A DNA stretch of 64,000 bases, taken from assembly GCA_965644265.1 (NCBI GenBank), contig OZ286469.1, forward strand, positions 39,866,001 to 39,930,000. Direction: 5' to 3'. Of the stretch, positions 1,744-54,700 are shown one piece after another (position 1 is the first letter of the stretch; the number at the start of each line of letters is the position of its first letter). The translations under genes were made by a program, and so were the position numbers. The DNA is from Glycera tridactyla (Eukaryota). A model generated the notes under the pieces. The model saw only the letters and a list, made by a program, of their open reading frames with translations. It was not told the origin of the DNA and ran no database searches.

Positions 1744-1814
<71 letters not shown>

Positions 1815-6600: not shown

Positions 6601-9600
6601 GTGTGAGGTGAGCACATGTTATGCTGATGACTGTGCTGTTATGTGCCCTCTGCAAAGTGAGCCATACATACCCTCTGCCCAGGTGAGTAACAACAATTGC
6701 CATACCATTCAAGAGTCAATTATATTTCTCTTTGTTGGTCACAATCATAATATCGACGATATCCAGTGTAGCTTGTGTCTCTATCACGAGATATATAAAC
6801 TAGTCGTTTGAGTACTACACGTGACATGCGGCCAAGATAGTTGTCTCTACACCTCAAAAGCTTTTCACAGATTTTATTGTATGAATATTCCATCATATGA
6901 GTGCTGGACCTAAATTTTGTATGACAAACTAATTCCACGGTGAGTGAGAGCACCTATCTAGAACGTGTTACAGAATGATAAAATACAAGCAAATAAAATA
7001 TGAAAAAGTCTAGATAGGGTCGGGATGGTGAGGGTTAGATGAAATTGATTATATTGTTTGCTCTACAAAGTGTACATTCACACCTGTACATTATTTGCTC
7101 CATCAGGTGACGACAGTTGGTCCACTGACAACGACTGAAGGTGGGGAGCCCGCCTACGTGGAAATACATACTTCTCTATCACCAGAGTTCTTCTGTATGA
7201 ACAGAACCTTGGAGGATGACCGCAGTGTCTGTGAGATTTCCGTCTGGACCTACATTGGAATCACTGATGACGAGCTCAAGTGTTATGACACCGGTATCTC
7301 AGTATCACAGGCGGTAATTGGTTGGGTTGCTGACTACCCGCAGGATGTCCGAGAGGATTGTGGTATCCGTATTACCATCACCAACTGGATGGAGACACTC
7401 CGCATCCCTATCTATGCCATGATTGATGGAGTTGTGGATGGCACACAGACACGTACTACACATGTCCATCACCAAGTGGAATATACCAACACCCACGTCT
7501 TTGATATGGAACTCGCTAGCATTGATGTAAGAATCATTGTGGACTTTTGTAGCAATTTCAGTATAGGAACACAGACTCATTTCTCTTAAAAAAAAACATA
7601 AAAAGGAGGGGATTGTGGCTTCAACTGTGGCTCAATATCATGAATGCATGGATGAGAAGAAACTTCCTTTCATTTGGTACATCTGCCATGAAAGCTAACA
7701 AAATGCTTGGTAGACTATGCCATAATCAGCTGAATATTTGGTTGTTCACAGGCCATCTTGTTTCAAGTTATCACTTCATGTACCACAGAGTTTGTGGAAC
7801 ATTTACACATGGATTGATTCTATAGAACTTGATCATATACCTGCCCCATACCTGTTGATTAACAACCAAGACCTACTGAAAACATAATGATGATAATGTA
7901 AAAGGTAGTCTAGGGGGTAGACTTTGGGTGATCTTGGAATAAGGTAGAAGTAGGTATGGTGATCAATTTTGTATTCTATACATTGCAGTGATGACTAGAT
8001 TCGCTCTATATTGCTTCTCACTTGTCTTTCAGGTGAACATTGTTGATGTGAACAATGATGTGGAGTGCCATGCCACAGGAGACCCTCACTACATCACTTA
8101 TGATAAGTAGTAAGTATGTGAATATGAGTTGCTTATATAACGCTCCCATTGTGTTTGTGCATGGTCTACTAAGGTATGAGATTTGCATTGAATATATGTG
8201 ATGTGGTTGGCCCTTAGGATAGTCAGTTAAGGCTTGTTTCACTTTGGTAATCAGAAATTAATTGTCCACATGCAGCATGTATTATGCCCTTCGAGGTTCA
8301 ATGCTCTTCTGTTTGAAATGAATGAAACATTCAAAACATGGTCGTTCGATGGGCAGGGGAGAGATGGGCTGATTGGATACGTCAGAAAAATTGAATTGGT
8401 TTCCAGATCGAGTTATGATGATATACATGATACCTTTGGATAATATACACATGATTGTCGGGGGCAGAAGATATGATGAAGAAATATTGGTTTTCAGCTA
8501 AAGAGAGCTTGATTTTCTCATCCTCCCGAGTAACACACTCGAAGCACATAATCAGCAGGTTTGATACAATGTACTGCTTTCTTCCTCTTTTAGTGAGTTT
8601 GACAACTACTTCGAAGGAGAGTTCATACTCTACAGGCACACATCATTGCCATATGAGGTATGTTTCAGGAGAAATCTTTTGCTTTGATTAATCTGATCCT
8701 ACCGATATCGCTATCAACAGATAACCATTACCATGATAGGAAATGCATCATCATCACGATGGTACCACTTAAGTCAATATCAAATCATTTGAATTGTCCC
8801 AAATCTTGATTTTTTTCACATGAATGTTCGAAGACCAGAAGTTGAACATTCTACCCCCACCAGTCGAAACCCCCAGAAGTCAAGAGAAGTATTCATAAAA
8901 TCAAGTATCCATATACCACTTATGTATATTTATTGCAATGTTGATTGAAATGCCTATCACTGTCCGTATCCATATCTATGCTTTGTATTTCAGGCACGCA
9001 CATTCCTACGGAAGTGTTATAATACTGTGGCCTGTACTTGTGCAGTAGCTGCTCGCTCTGGAGATGATGTCATTCTCTTTGATTCCTGCAACAATGGCGG
9101 CACCATTGCTGTCAAGGTGTATGCACATGGCGACCTCACTGCTGGAACACAGCTCCTACAATATAACGGTGGATCCAAGTATCAGGTGAGCTTTCTATAT
9201 TGAGAACCATCTAAAGAGAATGCATTCTTGTGAATTACGTTTGCATATCGCCAAAATAAGCAAAATTGCCTCTCGAAGATGAAGGTGAATATAGGCCAAA
9301 AATCACGAGCTACCATCTATCAATGGATGCGATTTGTTGCCATCAGAATTATGATTATGATTTCGATTATGATGATGACATCGATGAGATCGATAATCAC
9401 AGAGAGAGTTGTAACAGTAAATCATTATTCTCTTCACCATCATTTTTATATCACTATCATTATCATGATTGATATTATCATGACCATTTTTTTCATTATC
9501 TTTATTTTGTGACGATCAATATGTTTCATTACTCTTATTATTCCTGCAGTCATCTAATCACTTTTCACATACCCCAGCTCACTATGACCATTTCTTAATT

Positions 9601-12600
9601 CGCGTTTATCACCTTATCAGGTTGTCTACCCATCTGGTGGAATATTGACCGTAGAGTGGGGCTTTGATATCTACATGAACGTCTACTTCCAACCATCAGC
9701 AATGGACTATGGCAATACCGAGGGCCTGTGTGGTACCTATGATGGAGTAGCTGAGAATGAGTATACTGCCAGTGATGGCATCATTGACCCAACGACTGAT
9801 CGTCATCCAGATACCTTCATCCTCAGCTGGAGGTAGGTGTTAAACTATGAGCATTTGACTACATTCAGGTGGAGTGGTGTGAGGGGATGCGACACAGGAA
9901 CAGATATTGCCGATATTTCCTCTGTGCATTGTTGCCATATTTACAAAGTTCTGGGGTGGTATATGCGATGAAGATGATTGTTGCAGAAGTTGGTTGATTT
10001 GGTATCATTACACTCCCACCATATTATGGTGCATGGGCATATAGTGTTTACCCTATCCATGTGTGGGTGTGTGTTTGAGTGTGCATGTGTTCGTTTGTCC
10101 ATCTGTATGTAATGGGAATTTTCGTATCCAGCCTAAAATTTTTCTAGATTACCGGGAAATAATATTATGGTGACGATGTTCTATGTTATAGAGTGGAGGA
10201 TCCTGATGAGTCCATTTATAATGGTTACTGTGGTGATGGAGCTGGTACTATGACTTTTGGCGAGGAGTACTGTGACTGCCAGGGGCTGGGCTCAGCAAAC
10301 TGTGGTGGAGCCTTCAATCTCGTCCAGTGCTCACTCTCAACCATCACTGCTGGTGCAGTTGATGTCACTGAATCCTTCTTTGCCATGGCTACTGCTCCTG
10401 ATGAATGTGATGATGAGATATTCGAAGCTGATCTCAACTTTGCTCCTGTAAGTATCAAAGAATAAAGTCAATTGGTAATCTCGATGTCTGATTGCTTGAT
10501 CTATTGATGTTCAATCTATGATCAGAATGGGATTTCCCAAGCTGATTCCAATCTATGTCATGAAGTGATACCATGAATGACCACTCCAAGCATATAGTTT
10601 CATGATTGCATGAGGTTATCAATACAGGGTGGGTTCAGAGGAAAAGATTTGACTTCCAATAGGATTACTTTTTGTCAAGTGTATTTTATTTCCAACAATG
10701 TCATTTGGCATGCATGAGTGACCTGCCAGTTGTTTTACTCAACTATGATACTGACCACGCAAACCGATAAGATAGATAGAATAGGGTTGGTTTCAGTTCG
10801 ATATTAATGGCTTTGGATAGATGCATATGCCCTTGGTCACTAATCCTTAATAGATAGGCTCATTGATGTCATTTCCTTAATCTGAACAGTCAATCAATCT
10901 TGATTTTCATTTTGATTGCATGGCTTTAAAAATATTCTGGCCTAGTTGTATGATGTTTGTCTGCTTTTTGCAGAATGGTGAAATCGATGGTGTTGTGACA
11001 GAGGAAGATGCTGTGGAAGCATGTTCGACCATGATCCAGGCATCAGCAACAGTAACAGCCTGCTCAGCAACCATCACACTAGACATTGAAGCTCAGATCT
11101 CAAGCTGTGCTATTGACTACCAGGTAAGATCTATAGTCGCTGTCAATATTGCACCCATATTAGTACTTTGACGCTATTCTCGGTTGTACTTGAAAGAGTG
11201 GACATTGGTGACAATTGTCTTTTATGATTCAGATCTTGTGCAACGACGATCCATAGCCATAAGATTTTCATCATCTCGATATTTTTCCAAATATATGCTA
11301 CATTTCATTTATCACGGAGAATTATTGTGGCCTTGATTCCCTGGTGTGAACAAAATATTTTCTACTGATGTACATATATATAAAAAAAGCTTCTCACGAG
11401 CTTTTTTGGCCTAATGCCTGATAACCCTATCACAACAATCCTGTATCCGGGATGACATCTCTATTTCTTATGAATCATCTATTTATTCTTCTCATCTTAG
11501 TTCATATCGTTGATGATACTGCAGATGGGAAGGCTTGTTTAGCCTTGAAAAAAAAAGCAGCAGCCAGTACCAAGCCTCACTATAATGGTGAAGTAGATGT
11601 CCTTGCGGACATGTGATCTCACACTGGAAGACACACATAGGCTGTCCAGTTGCAGCCAAAATTTGCTAACGTTTTGTACCGGAGACGGTGATCCAATCCT
11701 CATTCTGACACACTCATGTTAGAGAATATTTTTAGCAAACGTTCCCTCTGTTAGCCAAACTGAACAGCCTGCAGGTAGTGGTTCCATGGCTGCATTCCAC
11801 TGACATGAGAAACGGTACCTTTCATCTTTCGCATGACTTATCAGCGATAAAAGTGATTGCATTTTGCTGTATTTTCTGACAGGCCTCTGGCATACTTGAC
11901 TGGGCTGAGGCTTCTATCAATGCCCTAACCCGGCAGTGCTTGCGATCACTGGCTACAGACACCAATCACTGGGTGACAAATGATGATGGAAATGTGGGGC
12001 CGCCAAATGACATCACAGAACAACTTTGTGACAATGACTGCAGTGGGCATGGTACATGCACAGGTAAGACCAGTGTCACTATATTGTTATTGATGGTGTT
12101 GCTGCTGATGTCGCTGCNNNNNNNNNNNNNNNNNNNNNNNNNNNNNNNNNNNNNNNNNNNNNNNNNNNNNNNNNNNNNNNNNNNNNNNNNNNNNNNNNNN
12201 NNNNNNNNNNNNNNNNNNNNNNNNNNNNNNNNNNNNNNNNNNNNNNNNNNNNNNNNATGATGATCGTGCTGACGATAATGATGATATTGATCACTGTGAT
12301 AATTTTTGCAGGTGGTACATGCATCTGTGATGGTGGCTGGATGCTGGGAGACTGTAGCCAAGAAACAAGTACTCCTCCAACCATCCCTGCTACTCCTCAG
12401 CACGTCACCTGTGATGAATCATGTGACTCAGTTGTAATCAATGGCAATAACTTCGCTAACCTGGCCACTCTCACTTGTCAGTTCACTACCATCACGGTAA
12501 GTGGCATTAGTAGAGGGATGGTGTCAGTCATGTCCCATCTACAACACAAACTAACGATGTTTTTGGAAGCTGCATGCTCAGGATCAATTCAAGAATCTTC

Positions 12601-15600
12601 TCCAGCACCGAGAAGCGTGCATTGTATTGAAAATCGAATTGTACTTAGGTCTGGGGGAGTTATGTCCATGAGAAACATTCGATAGTAGGGTACTTCCACG
12701 ATTTTGTTATAAATGGGAGAGGTCATCGTGAGTTCAGGAAGGTATGCAATGTCTTTGCGTTTGATTTTTTGCTGATTTTGGACTATCATGAATTGAACCA
12801 TCTTTTTTGACTGTTCATATTGATCTCGGCTCATTACCACTGTCAGGACCAGAAGATTCTGGTCTTCCCAGTGCTGCTGTGAGCTATTTATCTTTGACAG
12901 TTCTAATCTTTGTGAGGGGCAGTCCTCTGACTGATTGAATTTTAACCCTCCTTCCTTATGGTTACATGTGCGTATATGCTGAGGAAGGGGATCAGTGAGG
13001 CTGGTTCGCAGTCAGCCATCATAGCGTCACCACTAACCTGGACCCTAGGGTGCACCCTCCCAGATGATGTTCAGACATCTGACTATATATATGTTGTGTC
13101 TTTGTAGGTCACCACAACATCGTGGGTTGTCTCAGCTGATGTTGTAACATCGATAGCAACGTACCTCAGTGTCAGTCAGGTGGTTTGCACATTGCCCGAC
13201 CCGACCCACAGCTATGAGGTCAAGATTGCCAACGATGGCGTGACCTTCACTGATACTCCAGTCAGAGTCTTTGTCTTGGACACAGACTGCTTCATGTGTA
13301 ACTTCGACGATGGAACATGCATGCCTGCAGTAAGTTTCTTTTCTTCCTAGACATCGTACTCATTGTGATAGTATAGTCAAACCTGCCCTAAACAAACACC
13401 GTACCTATCTCAAGTCACCATGCTATAGTCATCCAAACATAGTATTTCCACTTCAAACCACCTGTGTGATCTGTGTTCTGAGCATGCATTTTTGCATCTT
13501 CCCTCGCCTGCACGCGAAGGACAGATTTAACTCTATCTGAATTTGATATTGGGGAGGCTCATATCACTACATGAATGATGTACATTTGTCATCGAGTACC
13601 CACTTCTGACCAATGATGATCTGATCAGGAGTCAGACAAAACACATCTCTTGTCCTACCTCCGAGGCTCGTGCTTGTGAGTGGAAGCATTACTTGGAAGT
13701 ATCGACACATCATTTCGAGCACCCCCTCTTCGATGCAGTTTACTACCATTTCTTTCAGACATCGCTGATTCTGTCTGTTGTCTGAGAAGCAGCAGTCCAT
13801 CCAGGAATGCATGTAGCCCCGAATTCCCGTTTGCATATAGCATCATTCCATTGTGGTTGTATGAAACAGAGACAGGCAGATTTCAATCCAACCTGTCAGA
13901 TTTGTAAAAAGAAAAAACAAGAGATGCTGCTCATACAGAGTTTAGGTGATTTCTATTCATCTGATTGGGGAGCAACCGGTATCGAGAGTCTTGAAAATTA
14001 TGAGTCCCTGTTTCAGGATGATGCTTGTAATATTGATGGTGTCTGCTATAAACATGGTGATGTGAATCCTGCCAATCCACTTGAGAGCTGTGATGCAAAT
14101 ATGGACCAATTTGCATGGTCGGAGACAAGTAAGTATCTGGCCAACTTGGTCATTCCCTCTTCCCAAAGCTATATTGTTTATTTATAAATCCTAATTCAGG
14201 GCCCTTCCCATGGCATAAATCGGACATGTCGACTAGTCCACTTCCACTCATCCTGGCATATTTCATAAAGAATAGGGACTGTCAAACCAGACTCTCAATT
14301 GCTAGAAATCCATAGTAGACTGTGTCAATTCCTAGTTGTTCACTGCGTTATGAGACAATTGTTTCTAATAATAATCGTTTTAGTGTATATTAGTGATCTC
14401 ACTCTCATTCATGGCTATCCATTGATTTTTCAGACAGCCAACCAGTACTTTTCCTTCCACTGGACGAATGTTCACAAGGATATGATTTCTCACTGTACGG
14501 ACAGACAACAACATGGACAGATTTCTCATGGTGTCCTTCCCCAGACCCCGCTGACTATCGCAACATGGCCTGCTTCAGTGGTGACTCGACTGTAGTCACA
14601 GTGGATGCATCTAGCACACTTGATTTGCCAGATGCCATGACTATGACAATGCATGTATATGCACAGTCAAATGGCACAATGATCAACTATGGTGATGACA
14701 GTGGAGTGGGACTCACAATCACAATTGATTCAAATGGAGTTGCCACCTTGATATTCGAGACCGTCTCAAGGGATGATGATGCAATCAGAGCAACCGTGGA
14801 GTTTGCCAACTTCCCAATGGAGGAGCTGGTGTTTGTAGTTGCAATGTATGATGGCACCACTGGTGAGATGAGTCTCAGTGTGGACTTCCAACAAGCAACA
14901 TCATATACATATGATACACCCATCCAACTGAAAACCCAAGGCAATCTTTATGTTGGCGATTTCGACAATAGTGGCATCGTCGGAACGATCTCTTGTGTAC
15001 AGCTATTTGCCAAGGTACACACATCTGAGGAGATACAAGCGATGGTCCAGTGTCCTCTGGGTAAGTGTGCGATAGGAGCCTAGGAGGATCTAGATGTTCG
15101 CGAAGAACATATCCTGTATGTAGCATTCACACAACTATATCTCTCTACTCTCTATTGTGACAACTATTCTCTTACCTTTTCTCTTTTGTTCGGGAGGGGA
15201 CATGCATGACTCAGTTAAGACGAGTGGTTTTCACTGTGTAATCTTGAATCATGATGCTTACGTGTATGGAAGAATTTTGAGTCTGTGTTTGAGGGACTAT
15301 CGCAATGTCTACCCAATGATCTAAACGATTAGGTAACGTTCCAGATTGTAGAATTTCCTATTTTCCCAGGTCTATCCCATGCAAACATCTTTCATATTAG
15401 CAAATGCCTAAATGGTATATATATCATATTGATCCGATGGAAGGAAAATTTTAAAGACTGAATCCCTCCCTCGACAAGATTGAACCATATCAAATTTTTA
15501 TGTCTCTTCTAGGTCCTGACTACGATGTCGGCATACAAGGTAGATATGAAATGATTTCTCATTTACAATATATTATAGCCATCATATATGGGATTATGAT

Positions 15601-18600
15601 ATGATGACTACTAACCGATCCCAATGCCACCGCTTGTATTTCCTGTGGTATCTGGCATGTGTTATGATATCCCAATACGATCGTCTTTAGATTCCATGAA
15701 AGAACCATGCTGTTTTTAGAGATTCCCAATTGTCTGATATAAGCAACATATGGAATAGCAGAAATGATTGGAGTGTTCGACCATATCTTGATACTTTTTA
15801 TCCGGAAACATTTTCGTTATTGGTGAGATAACCCGATGTGACTCCTGCATAACTCAAAATGATTGATGCGAGTCATTTGGCTGAAAACGAAGTACCTCTC
15901 AGAAAAGATAGGGCAAACTGTGTACTAAAACAATGTTGTCTCTCATTTCTTCATAAATATAGGATATCCTATGATCAGTGGACTTCCAGAAATCTCACTT
16001 GAGATGGTAGAAGCCACAAATGAAACTGAGGCAACTTGGCAGTTGCGATGTGACAGCCCCACTTCTCCTGATGGAGTCATCCTGTATGCGACTGTATGGT
16101 ATGTCAATGATGTGGCCATTACTGAGGAGATCAACACCTATAATATGACCAAGGTCGACCAAGTCGTATCATATCTGACGCAAGATATCCTGGATTCTGC
16201 CAACATCACATATGTCACGTCGGTAAGTATTCAGCCAGGCCCATATTGGAGAGAGAAAGAACTTGATCTCAGGCACCATCGCTGGCAACCTATTCATGTG
16301 TCTGTGCTATGATGTGGTGATAATTGTTGGACGAACTTATGACCAACAAAATAACTTAAATATGATGAAAGATCACAAGACCCAAAACACTCAGTGTCAT
16401 AGTCATCAACAAGGCCCTCAAGTCCCTCAAGGTGACCTCTGCAATGAAAATCCCTGGGATATACTATGCTATGTCAGATTCGCTTCCGAGATTGGTTTTG
16501 CTAACTCTCGGACAAATGATATCTCTCGCAAGATGATTGTCAGCAGCTGGTGTTCATCTGGTGGCTTCTGTCTTCAGTCTCAGTGCCTAGTGAAATCATA
16601 TTTCATACTTCTATACCTTGTGTCTATTTTCAGATCATGTGCGAGGTCACGACCTGCTTTGCGGACGATTGCCTCTACCCATGTCCTCTTCGAAGTGAGC
16701 CTTACATTCCTGGTATTCAGGTAGGAGACACATTTATCGTCATCATATCGCGGAACATATATTCGTTTTCATGATCAGGTTCGACCGCATTATGTGAAAT
16801 ATATATTCGGACTGCATGATGAGTACAACATCAATCTTCGGACGATTCACTCAATGTCCTCGGGGGATCGGGCCTAGAAACACACTGTGAAATGTATGAC
16901 TTTTGTTTCCCCAGATATTGTTTCTGTATCCTGCAGCACATGGGTCTTGAAAATGCACTTCCTTTCGCTTGCTTGCCTGCATGATACACATTGGAAGCAC
17001 ATGAAAAGTGAGAATGGATTTCCACCTAGGTAATGGTCATGCATAACTAAGAATGGACCAGCAAATTATTGTACGATAGCGTTTGATGTGAGATACAAAA
17101 AAAATCTGATGTCAATATAATGGAGGCAATATACTAGTGCACAATACTGCAAAGAGACATCAAGTTCTGCAAAGGTATCAAGATGCATTCGTGTGCATAT
17201 GATCTTTTGGGTGAGCCATCAGTTTCATCCTCGAACGTCCTATTTTAATGATTCCATGTCATATTCCTAAAGTGCCATATTGAATAGATCTCAGAATGAG
17301 ATCCTCGTGACATGAGAATTTCAGTCAGCTAAGATGATTGAATGTTACTACTTTCAGGTGACAACGGAGTCATTGACGATTGCCGAGGGAGGCTCAGAAG
17401 GAATTGTTGAAGTTACAACCAACTTCTCTCCAGAATATTTCTGTGAGAACAGGACCCTTGCAGATGGCCGCGAAGTTTGCCAGATCAGTTTCTGGGGATA
17501 CGTTGAGACAACAGATACTGATCTACCTTGCTACGATAGTGGAGCAGTTGTATCTCAGGCTGTGGTTGGATATATCCCTGAATATCCTGATGAGTATCGA
17601 CGAACCTGTGGTCTGTACATCAACACATACAACTGGATGGAAACACTGCGTGTTCCTGTCTATGCCATGATTGACAGTGTAGTTGATGGAGAACAAAGTC
17701 GAACACTACATATGTTACACCAAGTAGAGTACAACACACTACCAGCAAACAGTCAGGGCATGACTGAGATCAAGACTGTTGATGTAAGTATATCAAAGAG
17801 ATTGACTGGATTTCATGTCTCATCTTCTGACAGTTCTATCATATCAGATGATGATCGCTAACATGTCCCTGCCCATCAATTGGAGTCAACTCATGCCAAA
17901 CCTCTATCAAATATTGTTTGTGTGCCTTTTGATAGTAAATCTCTTGATAGTAAATCTCTGATCAGCCTCGTATTCAGTTCATTTAAGATTACACGTCAGC
18001 TGAATCCTTATAGTTTGAGGAGACGCATTGGTAGATCTTGTTGATCGATGGAAATCATAATCACGACAATCTGGTTCATGGAGACATCACCTGAGTGATG
18101 GATGCCCATGATGCTGAATATCATTATGTGATTGAGTTTATCCCATCGAGTTCAAACAAAGTCTATTCGTAAAATATGATCGTTTATGGCATCAAGGTAC
18201 TACACTCCGATATAGGCTATCGTGATTTTTCATTCTCCAAAAGTTCATAACTGATGATTTGTTGATAGCCCAATGAAGGATCAGTCGACTTTTTTTATGT
18301 ATGGCCTTAAAGTGGGAGAAAGGACTTCGAATATCTCTCTCTGATTTGTCACTTATTCAAAATAGCAAATTTCCCGGTGATTTGTCATTGCCAAGTCATT
18401 CCTCGGTCAGAAAAAGAGCGAGTAAATTTGAATGAGTAAGATGAATATCTAACTTGAACGAAATCTGTGCATCATCTATTGTTACATTTCTCTCGCAAGA
18501 TGCTGCAATTTTTATGCATGGCACCTTAATCATGATTATATTTTTTTATTCGTGTTTTGCTTACAGCTAACCATCCAGGATGTCAACAATGATGTGGAAT

Positions 18601-33600: not shown

Positions 33601-33613
33601 TTTTCCATCTGCC

Positions 33614-33658
<45 letters not shown>

Positions 33659-33680
33659 GACTGACTACCTGTTTGTCTGT

Positions 33681-33717
<37 letters not shown>

Positions 33718-42700: not shown

Positions 42701-45700
42701 GAAGAAAACATCAATTATCCAGGCAAAGTGAGCTGAAGTTGCAGGAAATGTCAATATCTATTCAGTATCTTTATTGTGAATCATTGATGAATTTCCCGTT
42801 CTATTGGCGCACATAAGACATTTTGAGAAATTTGCGTTATCGATATCTGGCAACACAGTTGCATATTTCAATCAGGTTGACTAAAGACTTTTGTTTCTAA
42901 TGATTGTAGGCTTCTGGTCTGTTGGATTGGGCCCAGTCATCTATAAGAGCTCTAACTCGCCAGTGCTTGCATCAGCTATCCACCAGGAGAGACTTATGGA
43001 TTGCCGATGCAAACGGCGTCTTTGGACCACCCGCTGACATCACCACTGCCCTCTGTACCAATGACTGCAGCGGACATGGCACTTGTCTAGGTTTGTCTTA
43101 AATACGTTGATTTTCAGCATATGAGTTCTTGATAAGGAACCCTTCAAACGGCTTGACACCAAGAATATCTGAGAGATCAGACTGTTTTGGATGGTGTGAA
43201 TTTCGGACATATTACACAATTATACCAGCTGATTCAGTGATTCAGCCTGTAATTTTGCAAAAGTGTTCAGTCAAAAGTAACAACAAGAAAGGAAAGGAAG
43301 TAGCAGAGCAATGCAACGATAAGATTTTTTTATATCCAAGTGATATGTTATGGGACTGGCCATTTTTTCAGTCTTCGGCTTCATTGAATTAGGAGTTAGG
43401 AAATTGGGACCAGTACCCTTAGTAGAGAATGTGATACAGACACGATGCTTCACCGGATTACCTAGAAATCCCCATCTTCACGCCATATCTTTGTATGATG
43501 TGAAGCTTCCAATATATTAGCTTTCCTCGAAGCCTAAAAATATCAATGATTGTGAGATCGTCTTGCTTTTCCATATCTGTCACATGCATCACCATCTCCA
43601 TGGACCGCATAAAGTGGTTACCCTTTTCAATGCCGTTTTGTTGTTTTACAGGTGGGACTTGTGTCTGTGACAACGGTTGGTTCCTGGGTGACTGTAGTCT
43701 GGATACCAACACTGCTCCAACCATCCCTGATACAACAGAGAATGTTGTCTGTGACCCCGAATGCCACTCCGTCAAGATATACGGCAGCAACTTCGCAGAT
43801 ACCAACAATCTCCTCTGCCAGTTTACCACCATTACCGTGAGTCAGTTCTGTCTGTCGGTCTCTTTGTTTGATGTCTGTCTGCCTGCCTGTCTGCTTACAT
43901 GCATGCCTGCCTGCTTGCCTGTCTGACTGCCTATCAATCCATCCGTCCATTGGTTCGTCTGGTATTTCTCCATGTCTGTCTGTCTGTCTGTCTGTATGCA
44001 TGTATGTCTATTGAGCTACCTTTCTTTCCTCATCNNNNNNNNNNNNNNNNNNNNNNNNNNNNNNNNNNNNNNNNNNNNNNNNNNNNNNNNNNNNNNNNNN
44101 NNNNNNNNNNNNNNNNNNNNNNNNNNNNNNNNNNNNNNNNNNNNNNNNNNNNNNNNNNNNNNNNNNNNNNNNTTCACCCATCCTCCCACACATCCATCCA
44201 CCCTCCCATCCATTCATTCAATCCCTGATCATTTCCCACCCATCCTTCCATCCATCCATCCGCTTTCCTTCCATTATCATAGGAGGTCACGCGAGGAATT
44301 GTAAGCAGCCCTAATGACTGCCTGAGCAGTGAAGAGTAATGTGAGTGTTATGACGTGTTCACTTGTAGGTGACGACGACATCATGGAGTGTGAGTGATGA
44401 GGTGGTGACTGTAGCTGCCACCTACCAGAGTGTAGGAGTGGTCATCTGTGACCTGCCAGACAGCACACACAGCTACCAGATCAAGGTGGCCAACAATGGC
44501 GCAGACTTCTCAGACAGGGGCCTGGTCGTTCTCAACCTCAATACCACCTGTGTCTCGTGTGATTTTGAGAGTGGTGACTGCACATTGGCTGTAAGTATAA
44601 GTCTACTCACAACTACCCTCAGAGTTGTCAATCTTCACTGCCATTCATTCTGTTGACTCTTTCATGATCTTTTAGAGTCTGGCTTAGGATAAATAAAGAC
44701 CCATCAGTTTGCGGCACATTGAACATTCTTGTTTTCTGACAGAAGGCGACGAAGAGAAAATGAAGGAGATCACTGGTATCTAAAACACAACTTGCGCTTC
44801 TTGACTTCCTGTAATCAGTCACTAATGTTGTTGATATGACGATCGTGAATGTATTCTAAAACTTGTGGATGTGAAAATACAGATATTTCACAGCTGGGTC
44901 ATCATACCTTCAGCATCCGTATGCAGGTAATATATAGTTGTAACTACAATCGAACCTGCTTTTACCAACTGCAGTATCATGATCTCAACCTGACTCAAGC
45001 AGGCATTCTGAATTCCCCACAGAAGTAACAAAGCTTTATCGAACAACGACCTGTCCTCTGTAAACATTGGTTATAATTCCTTGATCTATATCCTTCTGAT
45101 GTATCTTGGCAATATGGACTGACAGACTGATTTGATTTTGTGTTCACAGGATGCATGTGCTACAACAGAGGACTGCAATGGTATGTATTCGAACTTTCTA
45201 AGTTCTTCGTATCTTATTTCTATATCTGAATCAGAAGACATGTAGTTCCCACTTTTCTCAGATCAATGCAGTTCTTGCTAAATCTTGACCCTGCCTTTAC
45301 AACTAGATATATACAAATCGGTCCATGTTTTTCCATGCATTGTGAACACACTTATTGTTGAGAAGTATGAGATGAACCTCTGATGAATAACAAAAGCTGA
45401 GATAAGTCAGTAAGATAACATATAACTTCCATTTTCAGATGTGGCACCAAGAGGACCGGGCAGCCTAACAGCGTCGATTGACGTGGCAGCCGACCTCTCT
45501 GACGTCACGTTTGTGTGTACGCTGGCGGATGTTGACGTCAGTGCGGTAGGACACATGGTGGCATGGTTCCTTGACGACACTGATACCGCAGCAGGAGATG
45601 AGACATTGACCGCCACAACCTCCGCAAGCATCAGTATTAAGGACCTCAACGTCGACATCTATGGCCATATGGTGAGTGTAGGCAACAACAATGATACGAA

Positions 45701-48700
45701 TCTATGCTATAGATTTTATATTTTTTCATCCTGATACCACGATGAATATACATTGCCTTCAGTGGTGAAGTGCATTCTGCCTTGCCAATTTTCCCATCAT
45801 TGGCCGGTGCCTATGACAACATCATCTTAAGGAGATCAGAACAATATACTGCTGGTTCTACTAACTCATATCCGAAATAGATCTCTCATCAAAACCCAAA
45901 GACGCCAATATGGGTACATTGCTGCATGTATACCAATCACATTTTTTATTCTCCTGTGATGAATGGACAATGAATTTCAATTTTCTAAATTGGTAAACAG
46001 TTAATGTGAGACAAAAGTCATTGTCAACAAATCAAAGACAAAAAAACACCTACTGGGTTACTCTTGGTTCTGATGGGATGAAATAGTCCATGTGAGATTC
46101 TCCGAATTAGGTTTGCTCATTGTCATCATATCTCTTATATCTCACCTTTACACATCGAGCATGTATATCACATGACCAAATGGTGACCGTGTTTTAACTA
46201 TGAAACCTTTTTTTACTGTGGAATGCAGACTTCTTGAATTATAGGGTTTTCCCTATCCAACCGCTGATGATATATGATTTCTTGTGTTCCAGCTGAGATG
46301 TTGTGCCATTGCCTTCACCGCGGATGCTTGCGATGATGTCTACAGTGAGCAAGTGTGCAGTGCTTCACTGGATATTGGGGCTACTGGTGATGTGAGTACA
46401 TTTAGATATCCCTTGATGATGATAACATCATCTACAGATATTATGAAGATCGAAATCATGGGGTTGAGGAAAACCAGGGTAGTTACACGAATATAGAAAT
46501 GACTGATTCTTTTGTGCAATGGTAAACCTTCCTTTGGTGTGCCATGCTCATTTCTTTTTTGGAATATGTTACCAAGATGGTTGTTGATCTTATATCAGTC
46601 AATAGAAAAGAATCCTGGATTCACGATGACACACTGCTGTAGGAAAGACATTTTCATACAAAATAAGTAAAAATATCATTCTGCCTACCATTCCCGTTTC
46701 ACCTGAGTAACCTTCATGATGAGTCACAGAGAAAGGTAGATTTCTTTAGATGTAATGCAAAATTAAACGAGACTTACCTAAAGTAAGGTGAGTTTTTGAG
46801 TAGCATTATTCTTGTAATACTGCAACGAGAGTTCATGGGAGAGGAGGTGGCGCTGCGTACATCATAATAACCTCACTATTAGAAGCCTGAACCTTAGCCC
46901 CCCACTAAAATCCCAGGGCGGGAAAATAGTGGAGGGCCCATGAACTCTCGTTGCAGTATTACAAGAATAATGCTACTCAAAAACTCACCTTACTTTAGGT
47001 AAGTCTCGTTTAATTTTGCATTATTCCGTAATACTGCAACTCGTTCATAGGAGAATTCAAAGCAACTAGGGATAAGGTTCAATCTCCATAAAATTTGTTG
47101 CAAAAGCAACCGTAATGTCCAGGCATCCAAGTGAGAAATTAATAAAAAACAAATATAATAATTCCAAAAAATTATAGCATATATTATTATATACAAAATA
47201 CAAAAAATTACAAGAAATTTGTCAGATTTTCATCACCAATTTATGGAACCCATCATCGATGTGTGAATGTAGTTGGGTTCAAGACAGCTTGTGCAAATTC
47301 CCCATGTTGTACAATGGGTCTATGATAATGCCTTGCAAACGTAGACCTCCCTGACCATCCAGCTGACTTCATTATAGATAATAGAGAGAGTGAGTTTGCT
47401 GCTTTGCTCGTTGAGGCTGCTCTTGTACTATGCACTTTGTACTTGTCCATATCAATACCAGCATGATTCATAATTGACTTGATCCATCTACGAATGGTAT
47501 CTTTGGACGCTTTCGTAAATGGTTTCTGTGTGATAATGAACAATTTGTCCTCATCTGGGCGTCTCAGACTCTTTGATTTCTCTATATAGCATTTCACACA
47601 TGACAGAACACAAATACGACTATCTTCATATTTTGGAAAATGGACAATAAGAGGAGGAGCTGAGGCTTTCTTATTCTTCAATCTATCCGTAACAATGAAA
47701 CAAGCACAATCATCAGACAATCTCAGCTGATTTATAGATAATGCATGGAGAGTTTGACATCTCTGTCCAGTGACTAGAGCCGCTAACATAGCTAATTTCA
47801 TTGTCAAAATCTTGAATGGTAGCGATTCATTTGGAGGCAGATTCTTTATATAATGTAATACAACATCAGGGTCCCACGTATCTCTGTATCTAGATTCTGA
47901 TGGTCTAATTTCAGCTGCTCCCAACATGAATCTTTTCAAAAGAGGGGAATCTAACTTCTCATGCCCTGCACAAGACCACAACGCTTGTACAGCCGATTTT
48001 GCTGTGTTAATTGTGCTGTATGATAATCCTGTATCAACCATACCCTGTAGAAAATCCATCAATAATTTCACCAGTGGATGAAGGGGATTTGCAGATCTTT
48101 CTTTTGAATATGCTGCCCATTTCCTAACATAAGTTGCATATTGTATGATAGTGGTTGGACTCCATGATTGCAAGATAGTTGAGCTAACTCTTTCAGAAAT
48201 ACCGAGTGTTCTGAGGGTTGACTTGAAAGATATACTGCCAACAGACGCAGCTGTGGGTAGAGTGGATGTACTGCTGTTGGTTTGAAAGGAAGGGTTAACA
48301 GCTGTCTGCGGTTCGGTAGAAGAATTGGATATTTGGTCAGCAGTCGCACCATTTGGGAAAACCATGGCTGCGTTGTCCAAAACGGGACCACCATTATGGT
48401 TGACACTCCTTCTTCTTCTATTTTCTGTATTACTCTGTTCAAAATGCAAAAAGGCGGAAACATATAGTATAGATTATTTGACCAGGATAATGTGAATGCA
48501 TCGGTTCCGCATGCTAGTGGATCTGGTTTCCAGGATACAAATTTCTGTATCTGGTAATTCAGTCTGGAAGCAAACAAATCTATAGTTGGATTAGCATTAA
48601 ACACTTCACAAATCCATAAGAAAATCTTGGTTTCCAGTTTCCATTCTGTGCGTTCATTCATACATCTGCTTTCCTTGTCTGCAACCACATTGAATACACC

Positions 48701-51700
48701 CGGAATGAACACAGCAGATAACCAAATTCTCAAATAATGAGCCCATGACCATATTTCTTTGGCCAAATCATTCAAAATCATAGATCTGCATCCACCCATG
48801 TCATTGATATGAGCTACTACAGTAGTATTATCAGAGTGGATTTGAATGTGTGTGTCATGGGTAGTAGAAAAGAAAGTCATCAATGCAAGCTTGACTGCAA
48901 GTAATTCCTTTGCATTGATATGCAACAGCTGTTCCTCAGATGACCAATGACCACCAGTAGATTGATTGTCATAATGCGCTCCCCAACCAGTATTAGATGC
49001 ATCTGTAAAAACATGAATTAATACAGGTGGTGGTATCACAGGTTTTGGGCATGTATGAGCTAATGTTGTCCACCAGACAACATCTTGCAATGCTTTGTGA
49101 GAAAGTCCCATTTTACTTTCCAAATCACCCTTAGAATATCTCAAGGCCTGATTTTTCTCCATCTCTACTTGATGCTTGTACATATATGCATGAGATACAG
49201 CTAACTTTGATGATTCACAAGTCCCCAAAAATGACATGACTTGTCTGATAGTTGGAATTTCAAAAAGTAAAGGGTGTGCTCTAATAAGAATGGTAAATTT
49301 CCTCTTTTCTGTAAGATAAACTTTCATCTTTCTAGTGTTGAGTCTCAACCCCAGATGTTCAAGGCACTGTGTAGGAACAAGTTGTGATTTCTTATAATTA
49401 ATATGAAACCCTAATTTGGTAAACAGACAAACTGTTTCAAAAATATTCTCATTACATTCTGATTCTGAAGGGGACATAATCAATATATCATCAAGATATG
49501 CACATGCCGATATTCCTTTTGATTGGAGAAATGAAATAATGGGCTTGAGGATCTTTGTGAAATTTCGTGGTGAAGATGATAGTCCTTGAGGCATTCCAAC
49601 AAATTTATAATGGACCCCTTTCCATATAAATTTCAGGAATTTCTGAAACTGGTCTTGGACTTTGACAGTAAAGTATGCATCCTTAAGGTCAATGCTCCCC
49701 ATGAAGTATCCAGATCTCATCATTCCTACACACGTCTCAAAAGTGGTCATCTTGAAATGTCTATATACAATTTGTTCTTTGATACATTTTAAATTTATAA
49801 TCATACGAAACTTTGTACCATCTTTCTTGGCTCTAAGAAAAACACGAGAATAAAAATCATAAGGTTCTGGTTCTGTAATTTCCAATACACCATCATGATA
49901 CAAATCAGACACTTGTTTGTCCATTATCTGTGACATATTGACATCCAAAACAGTGACTGGTTTTGAAGTCTGTTGCGGCCAGTTCCAAAATTCAATGTCA
50001 ATGCCGTAGAGTACATAGTTCAATATGACAGGATCAGAGGTTATTTTCGTCCATTCAATATAAAACAATGGCAAAGAGGCAGCACAAAAAGAATTCATGG
50101 TGGGAAATTTACTCAGGTCTAATTCTTTCCCTGTTGAGGTACATTCTGTACAGGCATCATCATGCCCGGTTGATATTGAGTAGACATTTGAGGCTGCTGG
50201 GAAAACTGTTGGTAATGCTGGTACCCCTGGTACTGATATTGCTGGCCTCTTTGACCCCTCCTGTTTCTGGCACCCCTGAAACGCCCCTTGGGTGCTGAGC
50301 CCCTGCCCCTCCTGTTGGGGTAGAAATCCTGTCCTAAAAAAGACTTTTGCTGCTGCTTCCCTCTAGAATGATATTGGAAGTTGGACTGTTGGTATGAGCC
50401 AGATTTGCTGATTCTTTTAGTGATAGCTTTAGAGGCAGCAATAGAGGTAACTTTATCATTCAATTTGTCCCCAAACAAATGTTTCTGTAGCATAGGATTA
50501 TAATCATCAGGTCTGGCACATAAACCTCTGAACTCAGGATTTAGGAAAGGTCTCAACAAATATTTCCTCTCAACCACTAATTCTTCATTGGCAGACACAG
50601 CTAATGCTAAACTATTCTTGACTGATGCCAATGCAATCTTGGCCATGGGACCTTTCATACGTTTAGCTTCTTTTTGTAGTTCCAATTGAATGATGATACC
50701 TTTGAGAATGAGCATTTGGATGCGTTGTAACCTCATATCAGAGCGTTGAGAAGGTCTAGGAACATTTCCCCAGATCTCTTCATTTGTGCGTTCTGAATCC
50801 AGCATATTTCCTAAATTACCAGGAGATTTCAGGGATTCCAGCAATTTATCAAGTTGAGATTTTACCAGGGGCTTCTGAAACATTCCTAATAAAGATTTGG
50901 TCAGTTTCTCATCAATATCCTCTCCACGAGCAGCTTCTAGTTGAAACAAGTTATTGAGTTCATCTGCTAGATCGTAATTGTCATCATCTTGAATATTCTG
51001 GCTAGCAGTTGCTTTCACTGAAGAAACATCAAACAAATCATCATTTGAGTCTGGATCCCCAACCAACATAGCATGGGATACTTCATTTTCATCCAGTTCA
51101 TCTACATCAGCATCTTGGTCAATCTCACCCTCTTCAGCAGAGCTTACCTCATGAATAGGCCTAGTGATGGTAGCTGTAGGAACAGTATTTCTTATAGGAG
51201 GCAAGTTTGAAGTGTTATCTACAGTATCTCTGCCCGAACGATTTGACATCACAGCGTTTGTCAGTTGTGTCAGCTGATCTTGTAGTGTTGACATTTGGTT
51301 CTGCATACCTGTGACCGCTTCCAACGCTTTTTCCCCCGAGGATTTCGAATGCGAAGTACGATGTTGAGATCTGCTCCTTCTAGCACCATCTTTATCACGA
51401 TCCCGATGCGATTTACTTGTAGAATGGTGATCATCGCTGCGATGTTTCGACCCGTGATACGACTTCGATCTTTTTCCGCCTCCATGTTGTTTGTCAACTG
51501 ATCTCGGCCTATGTTGACTTTCAGATCGCTTCCGTTTGCTCGTTTCTCTGCGATCTTCTCGATCATGTCTACCAGACATTCTATCATCACGATTAGTCAT
51601 GTCTTTGTCATTCATAGTTGACAAATGGCCTGTTCGCACAGGAGACAGCCTAGGCATGACGTTTTGAGAAGAGTGGTTATCGTCCATGTTGACAGTAACC

Positions 51701-54700
51701 AAGCACTCGAATGAGAGTGAACAAAATATGGCGGGAATCTAACCCGGAAGTTGATGTGAGGTCGTAACCTCATTAACATAATTTATGTATGGCGTCTATT
51801 TCTACCTTACCTTTGTTGACATTCCGTCACTATTTCCGACGTTTTCTCTCTTCGTTATCGTTTATATAACGATTAGAATGCATGGTTGTTCAAAAATCTA
51901 TCCATAGCATTCCTCCTAGGAAAAAATTTGGGACACCTAGGGTTCGTTGCGATTTTCTTTATCGTAACTCCAGCGACAAGATTCCGTCCGTACGCTTCCG
52001 CAGTCGGCAACCAAGTGAGGTTATTATGATGTACGCAGCGCCACCTCCTCTCCTATGAACGAGTTGCAGTATTACGGAATAATAGTGTTTTCAGTCAAAT
52101 ATCTTTGAATTATCAAATACACTATGGTTAGGCTTGAGTGTCAGCTTTTAGTCAACTACATAGTTCAACGTGCCTTCATCAGTTTAATCAGGTTTAATGT
52201 GAAGTTTGTTGAGGCGTCTCTGACAGGTTGGTTACTTCAACTTGTCAACCTCTCTTTTCGCTCACTATTTTGTGTACAGGGTTTATGAGTGATGCCTGCG
52301 GGACCGGGCACATCCAACTTTCATAGATCAGGAAACTCCGCATGTATTATGCTTTAGGTTGATACATGCCATTTAACTCCGATCACTCACTCAATCAATC
52401 AGCCAATCAATCTATCAATCAAAACCATGTGAACATCTTGTCGTCTCGCGGTAATGATTACTCATGGGTCTCATCTACATATTGTAGCTTGGCAGTATGG
52501 AAGTGAAAGAGGGTTATGTGGCGGACTTGAACATTCAACTACCATTCCCACCAAACTTCGTGTGTGGTGTGGACTCGGCCACGTCCAGCACCTCCGAGCT
52601 GAGCGTACAGGCGGAGCTACTGATGGCAAACAAAGAGTACCAGTGCCGCTCTACTGGCAACTACATCCCACAGCTTATGATGGCACCTATTGTAGACCCT
52701 GTCTCAGGTAAGTCTCTCACACATTCCTGATGATGTCTGATCCCCATTTGTATATTTTCGTTATACTCCGACGTGATGGTATCGTTTCAAACACCCCTTT
52801 CATCCCTAAATTGTAATAATCAAGTCATTTCTCATCTGATTTGAGTTTCAAAATAGGTGTATTGACGACATTGAAATCTAATCGTATTAGGAGGGTGCTG
52901 GTATTACCGGCATTAGGCATCTGTGATGTTCTCCTATATATAGGCCAGAGGCGTTTTAAGTTACTAGACCCCTAGTATACATTGACTAGATTTAGGGTGA
53001 GTATCCTATAATTTACGTGACCATATGTTATCTTGTTTTGTTTCACGGCATGGGATCAATACAGACTCAGTTCTCAGTTGGAAATGTCAAGTGGAAGTAG
53101 CTGACAGTTCAGACACACCTCTACCTAATCTGAACATACATAATAAACTTTTGATGGCAAATGTAAATATGTAGCTGGGTGGAAGCTAACACCCAAGCCT
53201 GATAGCAATGCTTTTTTCTGCAAAGCGCAGCACTTGACACCTGGAAAAGCATTAGGTTTGTTGAATACTCAACCAAAGTGTTCAATTACAAACTGCCAAC
53301 TTCAAACCAGCTTTACAATAATGTCTTGCCCTATACTCGCAGTACGATGCCATCACACATCCTAGTAACATTTCAGGTTCCCCACCAGGGTTTGTGAGAG
53401 TGATGTCTGCAGGGGAGAGAACATATAGCTGTCATCGACCAGGAACACACGGCATACATAACCCACGGGTCGATAAATGCCGTTAAACCTCAAACAAACA
53501 AACAAACAAACAAAAATCAGTGGGAAATGACTTCCATCAACTGTGGATCCACTCTCTTATTTTCCAGCGAGTATGGGAAGTTCCCCATGAGGGGTGCTCT
53601 ATTTTTCAGCCAGCCAACAGCTTATTTCTCGTGAAGAGGAATTGGAAAATGCCCCTCGAAAAAAAACCCAAAACATTTCTATAATTCTTCGTCTCAGTCC
53701 AATTGTTGTCTATGCTATACGTTTTAGAACCGACCATAAAATCACTCTCGAATAATCCCGGTTCTGGGACATTCAGCCTTACTCAACCAATCAATGAATT
53801 CTACTCTTGCAGGTGAACAGATATGCGGTGCCCAATTGGATAACTCGCAGTGGTCGCCGGACTCCAACTATACCCTGTCTGTCCGAGGTCTGGATGAGGG
53901 CATCAATGATAGAACCACCACCCGCTACGTCCAGCTGACTGCCATCAGGACTGATGCAGGTGCAGAGATCTGCAGAACTGTGCTCGGACAGAAAGAGGTC
54001 AGTCTCACCATCTTGAGATTCCATATTCCATAAGGAAAATATGATCACTCACTGAAGGTTTGAGAAGAGGACACACTCATCTCACACATTCTTACCTACT
54101 TGAGCGAAATGACCATCCTCAGTGCATTGCTTGTCAAGCAAGTTAGCATGAGGAATATGTTTGTGAAGGAAATTGGATTGATTTGAAAATTCTGAATCGT
54201 AGACATGCTTACCCAGTGCATACCGACTTGAAAACCAAGGCTGGCCGTGTGTCTGTGCTACATGTACGTAAAAGAACCACCTTGTTATTCGGTAAGAGAT
54301 AGGGAAGTTCCCCGACAATGGTGCTCCTTTCTTCAGCTAGTTTATTTTTATGAAGAAAAATTGAAAAATACCGAGAGGACGTTGAGTACTCAGTCAAAAT
54401 CGTGTGCCTTTTCAACATATAATGCATTCTCCAGTGAAGGGTGATGTTCAATCCCATTTTTATAGGGTAACATGGCAAGCGCCAGAAAGGTTCGATATAA
54501 CTCCTGCAGCTCAACTCATCAATAATGTTGTATTCTAACCAATTGTCAATGAATGTCCAATAGGACCAAGGGATCAGCTTCATTGCCTTGGTTCTCTTGT
54601 TGTAGGTATCTATCATTCAGTCTCTGTCGGCACCTCGTTGTACATCGATCGGAGATCCACACGTTGACACTTACTACGGCTGGTGAGTACCTAGTGAAAG

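What the first reader, a model, noticed from the sequence alone, without database searches (positions are those of the whole stretch)
8078..54662. A GDPH autoproteolysis motif in every VWD module visible in the window
Seen: C-x-x-x-G-D-P-H at 8078-8089, 18612-18623, 28585-28596, 38776-38787 and 54651-54662, retained even in the very divergent terminal module. Each VWD also keeps the downstream G(L/M)CG. Known: GD/PH is the autocatalytic cleavage site of MUC2, MUC5AC and FCGBP, and is reported for the sea-star adhesive precursor Sfp1; the fragments typically stay tethered by the VWD disulfide. From memory, human VWDE has TDPH here. Inference: the precursor may self-cut into a chain of ~1,000-aa disulfide-linked subunits, making it an FCGBP-like polyprotein on a membrane anchor.
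Basis: partly seen in the sequence, partly recalled or inferred. Interest (0 to 1): 0.7.

Follow-up and report, generated by a model that had tools for sequence, protein, structure and literature searches.

The report
Self-cleavage motif in every VWD module
Each of the five VWD domains of a giant repeated membrane-protein gene in this invertebrate keeps the four-residue GDPH motif, and the cysteine pair around it, that make mucus proteins such as FCGBP cut themselves yet stay linked; the protein probably does the same, but this is a prediction by homology, not an unusual mechanism.

Summary
C-x-x-x-G-D-P-H is encoded in frame at all five cited places and nowhere else on either strand (5 matches, 0.01 expected). 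Each motif lies in a conserved 77-nt exon that opens a VWD domain.

I built a model of 77 GT-AG exons, 5,239 codons with no stop, ending in a transmembrane helix. All four N gaps lie in introns between phase-compatible exons. Cutting at every GD/PH would give pieces of 1,017, 1,016, 1,014 and 752 residues, plus a membrane-anchored piece of at least 624.

The motif exon aligns to the cleaved GDPH sites of FCGBP and MUC2. The G(L/M)CG cysteine aligns to the FCGBP cysteine that tethers the cut strand. The motif survives synonymous change, about 35% identity in the terminal module, and divergence to relatives on other contigs (eight further domains GDPH, one TDPH).

Cleavage itself is untested. 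No RNA run was listed, and the spliced domain could not be folded.

The protein is VWDE-like, not an FCGBP family member: no C8 or TIL domains were found.

The scan noted the same motif in the adjacent upstream window of this gene.

Verdict: a new member of a known kind, of moderate interest.

The parts
4..63549 (+). Gene model inside the window: 77 GT-AG exons, 5,239 codons, no stop. It enters the window inside a module and ends in a TM exon, with the gene running past both edges of the model.
   Evidence: The junction 44573->45439 is inferred only.
8066..8089 (+). C-H-A-T-G-D-P-H, module 1. Predicted scissile Asp-Pro at 8081-8086.
18600..18623 (+). C-H-A-T-G-D-P-H, module 2.
   Evidence: The exon aligns to FCGBP and MUC2 GDPH sites.
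28573..28596 (+). C-H-A-T-G-D-P-H, module 3.
38764..38787 (+). C-H-G-T-G-D-P-H, module 4.
54639..54662 (+). C-T-S-I-G-D-P-H, divergent terminal module 5.
8033..9832 (+). VWD domain 1, exons a-d (8033-8109, 8594-8657, 8994-9185, 9621-9832). Tether Cys codon at 9729-9731 in GLCG.
18567..20427 (+). VWD domain 2, exons a-d (18567-18643, 18970-19033, 19536-19727, 20216-20427). Tether Cys codon at 20324-20326.
   Evidence: (Pfam VWD).
28540..30779 (+). VWD domain 3, exons a-d (28540-28616, 29364-29427, 29974-30165, 30568-30779). Tether Cys codon at 30676-30678.
38731..41121 (+). VWD domain 4, exons a-d (38731-38807, 39204-39267, 39782-39973, 40910-41121). Tether Cys codon at 41018-41020.
   Evidence: (Pfam VWD).
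54606..57244 (+). VWD domain 5, exons a', b', c', d1', d2' (54606-54682, 55043-55106, 55912-56133, 56704-56827, 57139-57244). Tether Cys codon at 57144-57146 in GMCG.
63464..63532 (+). Predicted transmembrane helix (23 hydrophobic residues followed by basic residues) in exon 63411-63549.
   Evidence: Read from the sequence; no TM predictor was run.
12118..12256 (.). Assembly gap inside the g->h intron, in a GAT-type simple repeat.
44035..44172 (.). Assembly gap inside the h->i intron, in a low-complexity repeat.

Best explanation
These are genuine, selectively maintained GDPH sites at the turn between the first and second strands of five VWD domains. They belong to a giant type-I membrane protein built from tandem VWDE-like modules of about 1,016 residues. 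As shown for FCGBP, MUC2, MUC5AC, MUC4, SUSD2, BMPER and the RGMs, the Asp side chain most likely attacks its own Asp-Pro peptide bond in the secretory pathway. The polypeptide would then be cut once per module. The strand left on the N-terminal side (ending ...C-x-x-x-G-D) would stay in the sheet of the next VWD domain. It would be held there by a disulfide from its Cys to the Cys of G(L/M)CG. The mature protein would therefore be a daisy chain of about 1,016-aa pieces, with the last piece anchored in the membrane. Shown here: the motif, its position, its conservation, the cysteine pair, the open reading frame and the anchor. Inferred: cleavage, the disulfide pairing and expression.
For: Occurrence: the motif is in frame at all five VWD domains and nowhere else.

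Position: the 25-aa motif exon aligns to the GDPH sites of FCGBP (E 2.8e-10) and the MUC2 C-terminal region. A family profile of exon d has FCGBP as its best PDB match (E 3.3e-17). That alignment places the window's Cys on FCGBP C974 of CGLCG, in the same VWD whose GDPH strand Cys (C836) matched exon a. The spacing there is 138 residues, against 136 in the window.

[quoted passage not shown] In FCGBP, Asp and His are required for cleavage (PMC10880436).

Cysteine count: each VWD here has exactly six Cys, consistent with three pairs.

Selection: the motif codons differ synonymously between modules. The units between cut sites have dN/dS of about 0.14 at dS 0.7-1.5. Module 5 is only about 35% identical, yet C, G, D, P, H and the G.CG Cys are invariant. 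Nine further distinct VWD domains of relatives on other contigs have C-x3-(G/T)DPH: eight GDPH and one TDPH. L015's motif exon is cut at the contig start, so its upstream Cys is not seen.

Gene: open frame of 5,239 codons, canonical splice sites and a TM helix.
Against: There is no direct evidence of cleavage, of the disulfide or of expression; no RNA run was listed.

The residue I align by hand with FCGBP Gln4094, which contacts the Asp and whose Q->E mutant cleaved only partly, is Glu in modules 1-4, Thr in module 5 and Pro in L015.

The middle of the domain (exons b and c) finds no solved VWD by sequence, and several canonical VWD cysteines are missing. The local geometry may therefore differ.

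Recombinant MUC2 D4 stayed uncleaved in one expression system (PMC10880436), so GDPH does not guarantee cleavage in every setting.

One paralogue in a relative has TDPH, so the Gly is not indispensable to the family.

I could not fold the spliced domain.
Confidence: 0.62

Rival explanations
1. The motif is kept for folding or stability of the first turn of the VWD domain, and the chain is not cut, or is cut only in part or only under acidic conditions. The mature protein would then be one continuous polypeptide of more than 5,000 residues.
For: Recombinant MUC2 D4 with GDPH stayed uncleaved in the host cells used (PMC10880436). The FCGBP Gln4094-equivalent is Glu, Thr or Pro here, and Q4094E cleaved only partly (hand alignment). 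A TDPH paralogue exists.
Against: Every GDPH-bearing VWD domain named in the papers read is reported as cleaved in vivo. All four residues, including the catalytic Asp and the His, are invariant across about 35% identity and across relatives, apart from the G->T paralogue.
Confidence: 0.25
2. The chain is cut but the pieces are not covalently held. The cysteines pair differently, so the N-terminal modules are shed from the membrane-bound stub, as described for the two MUC4 subunits.
For: PMC10880436 notes that some cleaved VWD domains lack the tethering disulfide. The pairing here is inferred from alignment and cysteine parity only.
Against: Both cysteines of the FCGBP tether pair (C472-C611) have aligned counterparts in all five modules and in all relatives where both exons are seen. 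The spacing is nearly the same: 136 against 138-139 residues.
Confidence: 0.1
3. The array is not a working gene. It could be an assembly artefact of collapsed or expanded tandem copies, or a decaying pseudogene, which would make the motifs meaningless.
For: No RNA run was listed. There are four assembly gaps in the window. One exon junction (44573->45439) had to be inferred.
Against: The model has 77 exons with canonical splice sites and 5,239 codons without a stop. The units differ at dS 0.7-1.5 with dN/dS of about 0.14, so they are old copies under purifying selection. The same exon order is found on contigs of other organisms.
Confidence: 0.03

Closest known systems
FCGBP (IgGFc-binding protein)
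   Same: It has many VWD domains in one chain, nearly all with C-x3-GDPH followed by Y-x-T-F/Y-D. It is cut at every site yet held by one disulfide per VWD, between the strand-1 Cys and the second Cys of CGLCG. It is the best PDB match for both the motif exon and the exon-d profile (PMC8267560).
   Different: FCGBP repeats a unit of about 400 aa, VWD-C8-TIL-E, and is secreted. Here the unit is about 1,016 aa with EGF, IPT-like, LamG and other domains. No C8 or TIL was detected, and the chain ends in a TM helix.
MUC4 and SUSD2 (membrane proteins with one GDPH VWD domain)
   Same: Both are type-I membrane proteins in which an extracellular VWD domain carrying GDPH is cut, leaving a membrane-bound subunit (PMC10880436). 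Module 5 plus the EGF and TM region has the same logic.
   Different: They have a single VWD domain with different partner domains (recalled from memory, not tested). They have no tandem array and no LamG.
[quoted passage not shown]
   Same: Relatives share the window's exon order (n, a, b/c, d ... h, i, j, k). They carry precomputed Pfam hits to Vwde (PF26129) and Ig_VWDE (PF25776). The Vwde-hit exons are homologous to window exon f. The window has VWD plus EGF-like exons.
   Different: The relatives seen here appear to have one VWD per locus, some with Sushi exons upstream. The window strings at least five units, plus a LamG domain per unit, and ends in a TM helix. No paper in the library mentions GDPH together with VWDE.
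Sea-star footprint protein Sfp1/Sfp2
   Same: It is a large multi-domain invertebrate protein, autocatalytically cleaved into subunits before secretion. Sfp2 is described with one such site (PMC9382459).
   Different: It is a secreted adhesive of 3,853 aa with four subunits and other domain types. No sequence comparison was made here.
Repulsive guidance molecules (RGMA/B/C)
   Same: A cleaved GDPH in a VWD-type domain has been seen in crystal structures. Mutations at or near the motif impair secretion (PMC10880436).
   Different: They are small single-domain signalling proteins that do not appear among the PDB sequence matches.

Membership tests
GDPH-type self-cleaving VWD domain | A VWD domain | tested here: met
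   Pfam PF00094 hits exon d above cut-off: 24 and 25.8 bits against 22.9. PDB matches to VWF D3, MUC2 and FCGBP.
GDPH-type self-cleaving VWD domain | G-D-P-H at the start of the domain, aligned with experimentally cleaved sites | tested here: met
   The exon-a alignment to FCGBP and MUC2 D4 places GDPH on GDPH, followed by Y-x-T-F/Y-D. Five of five modules carry it. The strand assignment comes from the literature, not from a model of this protein.
GDPH-type self-cleaving VWD domain | Asp and His of the motif present (both needed in FCGBP D10) | tested here: met
   Both are invariant in the 5 window domains and in 9 distinct domains of relatives. The requirement comes from PMC10880436.
GDPH-type self-cleaving VWD domain | Gln contacting the Asp (FCGBP Q4094) | tested here: inconclusive
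   By hand alignment, with a two-residue insertion, the position is Glu (modules 1-4 and most relatives), Thr (module 5) or Pro (L015). FCGBP Q4094E cleaved partly.
GDPH-type self-cleaving VWD domain | Cysteine pair that tethers strand 1 after the cut | tested here: met
   The Cys four residues before the Gly, and the Cys of G(L/M)CG, align to FCGBP C836 and C974 of chain 8rde_A. The spacing is 136 against 138-139 residues (PMC8267560). The bond itself is not shown.
GDPH-type self-cleaving VWD domain | Observed cleavage between Asp and Pro | not testable with these tools
   No protein data were available and no RNA run was listed.
FCGBP / gel-forming mucin D assembly | VWD followed by C8, TIL and E domains | tested here: not met
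   Exon-wise Pfam scans of the exons after the VWD domain gave no C8 or TIL hit at E up to 1. Caveat: domains split across exons are scanned with less power.
VWDE family | VWD plus EGF-like domains | tested here: met
   VWD as above. The EGF signal is weak in Pfam (E 0.05-0.5) but the C-x-C-x5-G-x2-C pattern is clear in exons g and h.
VWDE family | Pfam Vwde (PF26129) and Ig_VWDE (PF25776) domains | tested here: inconclusive
   PF26129 is not in the local Pfam copy: exons with precomputed hits give nothing. Relatives' exons with precomputed Vwde hits are homologous to window exon f. Ig_VWDE hits a relative's exon at E 5.8e-6 but not the window's exon l.

The most novel reading that the evidence does not exclude
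The mature protein is a membrane-anchored daisy chain of ten or more self-cut pieces of about 1,016 aa, counting the upstream modules that the scan noted. Each piece would be held to the next only by one inserted beta-strand and one disulfide. That would be a new kind of cell-surface tether whose length or shedding could be set by reduction or by force. Alternatively, the freshly cut Asp ends might cross-link it into mucus or matrix, as I recall being proposed for MUC2.
Probability: 0.25. Interest if true: 0.65.

Novelty: new member of a known kind. Interest (0 to 1): 0.4.

Why it matters
GDPH self-cleavage of VWD domains is well documented, but its purpose is still unknown (PMC10880436). Processing of VWDE-type proteins has not been studied: no paper in the library pairs GDPH with VWDE. 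This gene offers a natural array of at least five such sites in a domain context very different from mucins, anchored in a membrane. There is also one natural TDPH variant in a related organism. If cleavage is confirmed, FCGBP would no longer be the only known multi-cut, disulfide-stitched VWD protein. Comparing the two could help separate what the cut is for from what the surrounding domains do. As it stands, this is a sound annotation-level prediction and not a surprise.

Tried and rejected
- A whole-library phmmer search with the LamG exon returned only exon-sized fragments and unrelated bacterial LamG proteins. No full-length relative was obtained.
- No RNA-holding sequencing run was listed for 53700-58200, so read laying was not used and the exon model has no transcript support.
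- PDB searches with exon b, and with a relative's fused b+c exon, found nothing.
- Pfam on the 25-aa motif exons gave nothing because they are too short.
- Structure prediction of the VWD domain was not attempted. The domain is spliced from four or five exons, so it has no reference, and I did not type it in.
- I looked for a j-like exon between 44590 and 45439 and found none. I used the in-frame alternative donor at 44573 instead.
- A second VWD copy suspected in L011 was not confirmed.
- Chance was rejected as an explanation by the shuffles. Exon homogenisation alone was rejected by the synonymous differences, by module 5 and by the relatives.
Full report
OBSERVATION

ECHATGDPHYITYDK occurs three times, ECHGTGDPHFLTYDK once, and RCTSIGDPHVDTYYGW once in the terminal module. 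A degenerate DNA pattern for C-x3-GDPH matches these five places and nothing else on either strand. Shuffles give 0.01 expected matches. GDPH alone also gives five matches, against 0.53 expected. The downstream G(L/M)CG is present in each module.

GENE MODEL AND GAPS

Self-comparison of + strand reading frames shows a 14-exon unit repeated about every 10 kb. I placed splice sites by conserved phase and position. The resulting model has 77 exons, all GT-AG, covering 4-63549. It has 5,239 codons and no stop.

The motif lies in a 77-nt exon (exon a) in all five modules. It is followed by a 64-nt exon b, then exons c and d.

The two gaps named by the scan's program are intronic:
- 12118-12256 lies between 12063 (phase 1) and 12312, in a GAT-type repeat that the same intron of module 1 also carries.
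- 44035-44172 lies between 43836 (phase 0) and 44369.

The other two gaps (58207-58367 and 62936-63070) also lie between phase-compatible exons. A small exon hidden in either cannot be excluded.

The weakest join is 44573->45439. The terminal module lacks the j and k (LamG) exons, and I found no j-like exon there.

In the model, GDPH falls at residues 816, 1833, 2849, 3863 and 4615. The predicted pieces are therefore 1,017, 1,016, 1,014 and 752 residues. The last piece, of at least 624 residues, carries a 23-residue hydrophobic helix (63464-63532) followed by basic residues.

WHAT THE MOTIF SITS IN

Pfam calls exon d a VWD C-terminal part above its cut-off. The 25-residue exon a on its own finds FCGBP (E 2.8e-10) and the MUC2 C-terminal region in the PDB. 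In those alignments its C-x3-GDPH-Y-x-T-Y-D lies on their C-x3-GDPH-Y-x-T-F-D. A profile of exon d from the window and its relatives has FCGBP as best PDB match (E 3.3e-17), ahead of VWF and MUC2.

In that alignment the window's single Cys falls on C974, the second Cys of CGLCG. This is in the same FCGBP VWD whose strand-1 Cys (C836) matched exon a. The two are 138 residues apart there, and 136 apart in the window. In human FCGBP vWD1 the pair C472-C611 is 139 apart.

Ehrencrona et al. showed that FCGBP is cut at all its GDPH sites and that a single disulfide per VWD holds the pieces (PMC8267560). Each VWD in the window has exactly six cysteines, which fits three pairs.

Yeshaya et al. showed that Asp and His of the motif are needed for cleavage, and that the motif sits between the first two strands (PMC10880436).

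CONSERVATION

The codons of C, D, P and H differ synonymously between modules. Exon a of modules 1-3 differs at 8-12 third positions and only 2-5 first or second positions. Exon homogenisation therefore cannot explain the identical peptide.

The three full units between cut sites have dN/dS of 0.14-0.15 at dS 0.7-1.5. They are old copies under purifying selection.

The VWD of module 5 is 35-37% identical to the others. Even so, C, G, D, P, H and the G.CG Cys are all among the invariant columns.

RELATIVES ELSEWHERE

I used exon c as an unbiased probe, because it does not contain the motif. With it I fetched contigs from metagenome and other assemblies. They share the exon order n, a, b/c, d ... 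h, i, j, k at 27-50% identity.

Their exon a reads as follows:
- L002: CHATGDPH.
- L005/L006, L007/L008 and L013: CSASGDPH.
- L014: CIAQGDPH.
- L010-L012: CESTGDPH.
- L015: ...ATGDPH, cut at the contig start.
- L009: CSALTDPH.

That makes nine distinct VWD domains of relatives, eight with GDPH and one with TDPH. The D-P-H is invariant in all nine. The upstream Cys is invariant in the eight where it can be seen. The G.C(G/S) Cys is kept wherever exon d is seen.

These contigs carry precomputed Pfam hits to Vwde (PF26129) and Ig_VWDE (PF25776). The Vwde-hit exons are homologous to window exon f, and best of all to the terminal module's f'. PF26129 is not in the local Pfam copy, so the window itself could not be scored against it.

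MECHANISM

By homology, the Asp side chain attacks its own Asp-Pro bond in the ER or Golgi, and the chain opens. The strand ending in G-D stays in the next VWD sandwich, pinned by the Cys(-4) to G(L/M)CG disulfide. This would turn the precursor into a disulfide-stitched chain on a membrane anchor.

The motif, its position, its conservation, the cysteines, the open frame and the anchor are shown. Cleavage, the pairing and expression are inferred.

Caveats:
- The residue I align by hand with FCGBP Gln4094 is Glu, Thr or Pro here, and the Q4094E mutant cleaved only partly.
- The middle of the domain matches no solved VWD by sequence.
- Recombinant MUC2 D4 can stay uncut.
- A TDPH paralogue exists.
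- No RNA run was listed.
- I could not fold the spliced domain.

COMPARISON AND NOVELTY

The protein works like FCGBP, but it is not an FCGBP or mucin family member. Exon-wise Pfam scans found no C8 or TIL. Each unit also holds EGF, an IPT-like exon, LamG (Pfam E 3.4e-9) and other domains. It belongs with VWDE-like proteins, whose processing is unstudied. No paper pairs GDPH with VWDE, and Leigh et al. note that the gene has not been studied in depth.

The terminal module with EGF and TM repeats the logic of MUC4 and SUSD2. Sfp1 is indeed described as autocatalytically cut into four subunits (PMC9382459).

The scan's own notes say that the window just upstream holds at least six more modules of the same gene with the same motif, and that the genome is probably an annelid's. 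I could not check that DNA.

The finding is a well-supported prediction of a known mechanism in a new protein. I rate it a new member of a known kind, of moderate interest.

Noticed in passing
window 58607-58618 (exon 58545-58696): In the model, four consecutive Arg codons (T-T-R-R-R-R-E-A) lie in the linker after the fifth VWD domain. This looks like a furin-type site and would add a second, enzymatic cut between the last VWD and the EGF/TM part. It is seen in the terminal module only.
   Followed up: no
window 44369-57244: The terminal module differs in build from the other modules. It has no j and k (LamG) exons. Exons n, d and e are each split by an extra intron, and exon c is 30 nt longer. 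Exons a and b keep exactly 77 and 64 nt.
   Followed up: partly
window 59230-59385 versus L007, L010, L012: The terminal module's exon f' is the window's best match to the single-VWD relatives' Vwde exons (E about 1e-8, against 1e-3 for the inner modules). The membrane-proximal module may therefore be the ancestral unit and the inner modules a later expansion.
   Followed up: partly
L009:832: One paralogue in a related organism has T-D-P-H in place of G-D-P-H, while two other contigs from the same samples keep GDPH. This is a natural test case for the role of the Gly, whose bond to Asp is cis in the FCGBP crystal structure.
   Followed up: no
L007:751-1302, L013:2232-2786: Relatives have Sushi-domain exons a few kb upstream of exon n and appear to hold one VWD per locus. 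The tandem array may therefore be special to the window's lineage.
   Followed up: no
window 1611-1830 and 12257-12311: A (GAT)n microsatellite sits in the g->h intron of two modules. It reads as poly-Asp or poly-Met in open frames, and it coincides with the assembly gap at 12118-12256.
   Followed up: partly
window 18567-20427 versus 28540-30779: The VWD domains of modules 2 and 3 are 95.6% identical in protein, while module 1 is about 79% and module 4 about 71% identical to them. This fits the scan's note of exon homogenisation between some modules.
   Followed up: partly
window 46753-52083: The scan's notes place a DIRS1-type retroelement in the long intron between exons m' (46293-46391) and n1' (52488-52707). 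I did not re-examine it.
   Followed up: no
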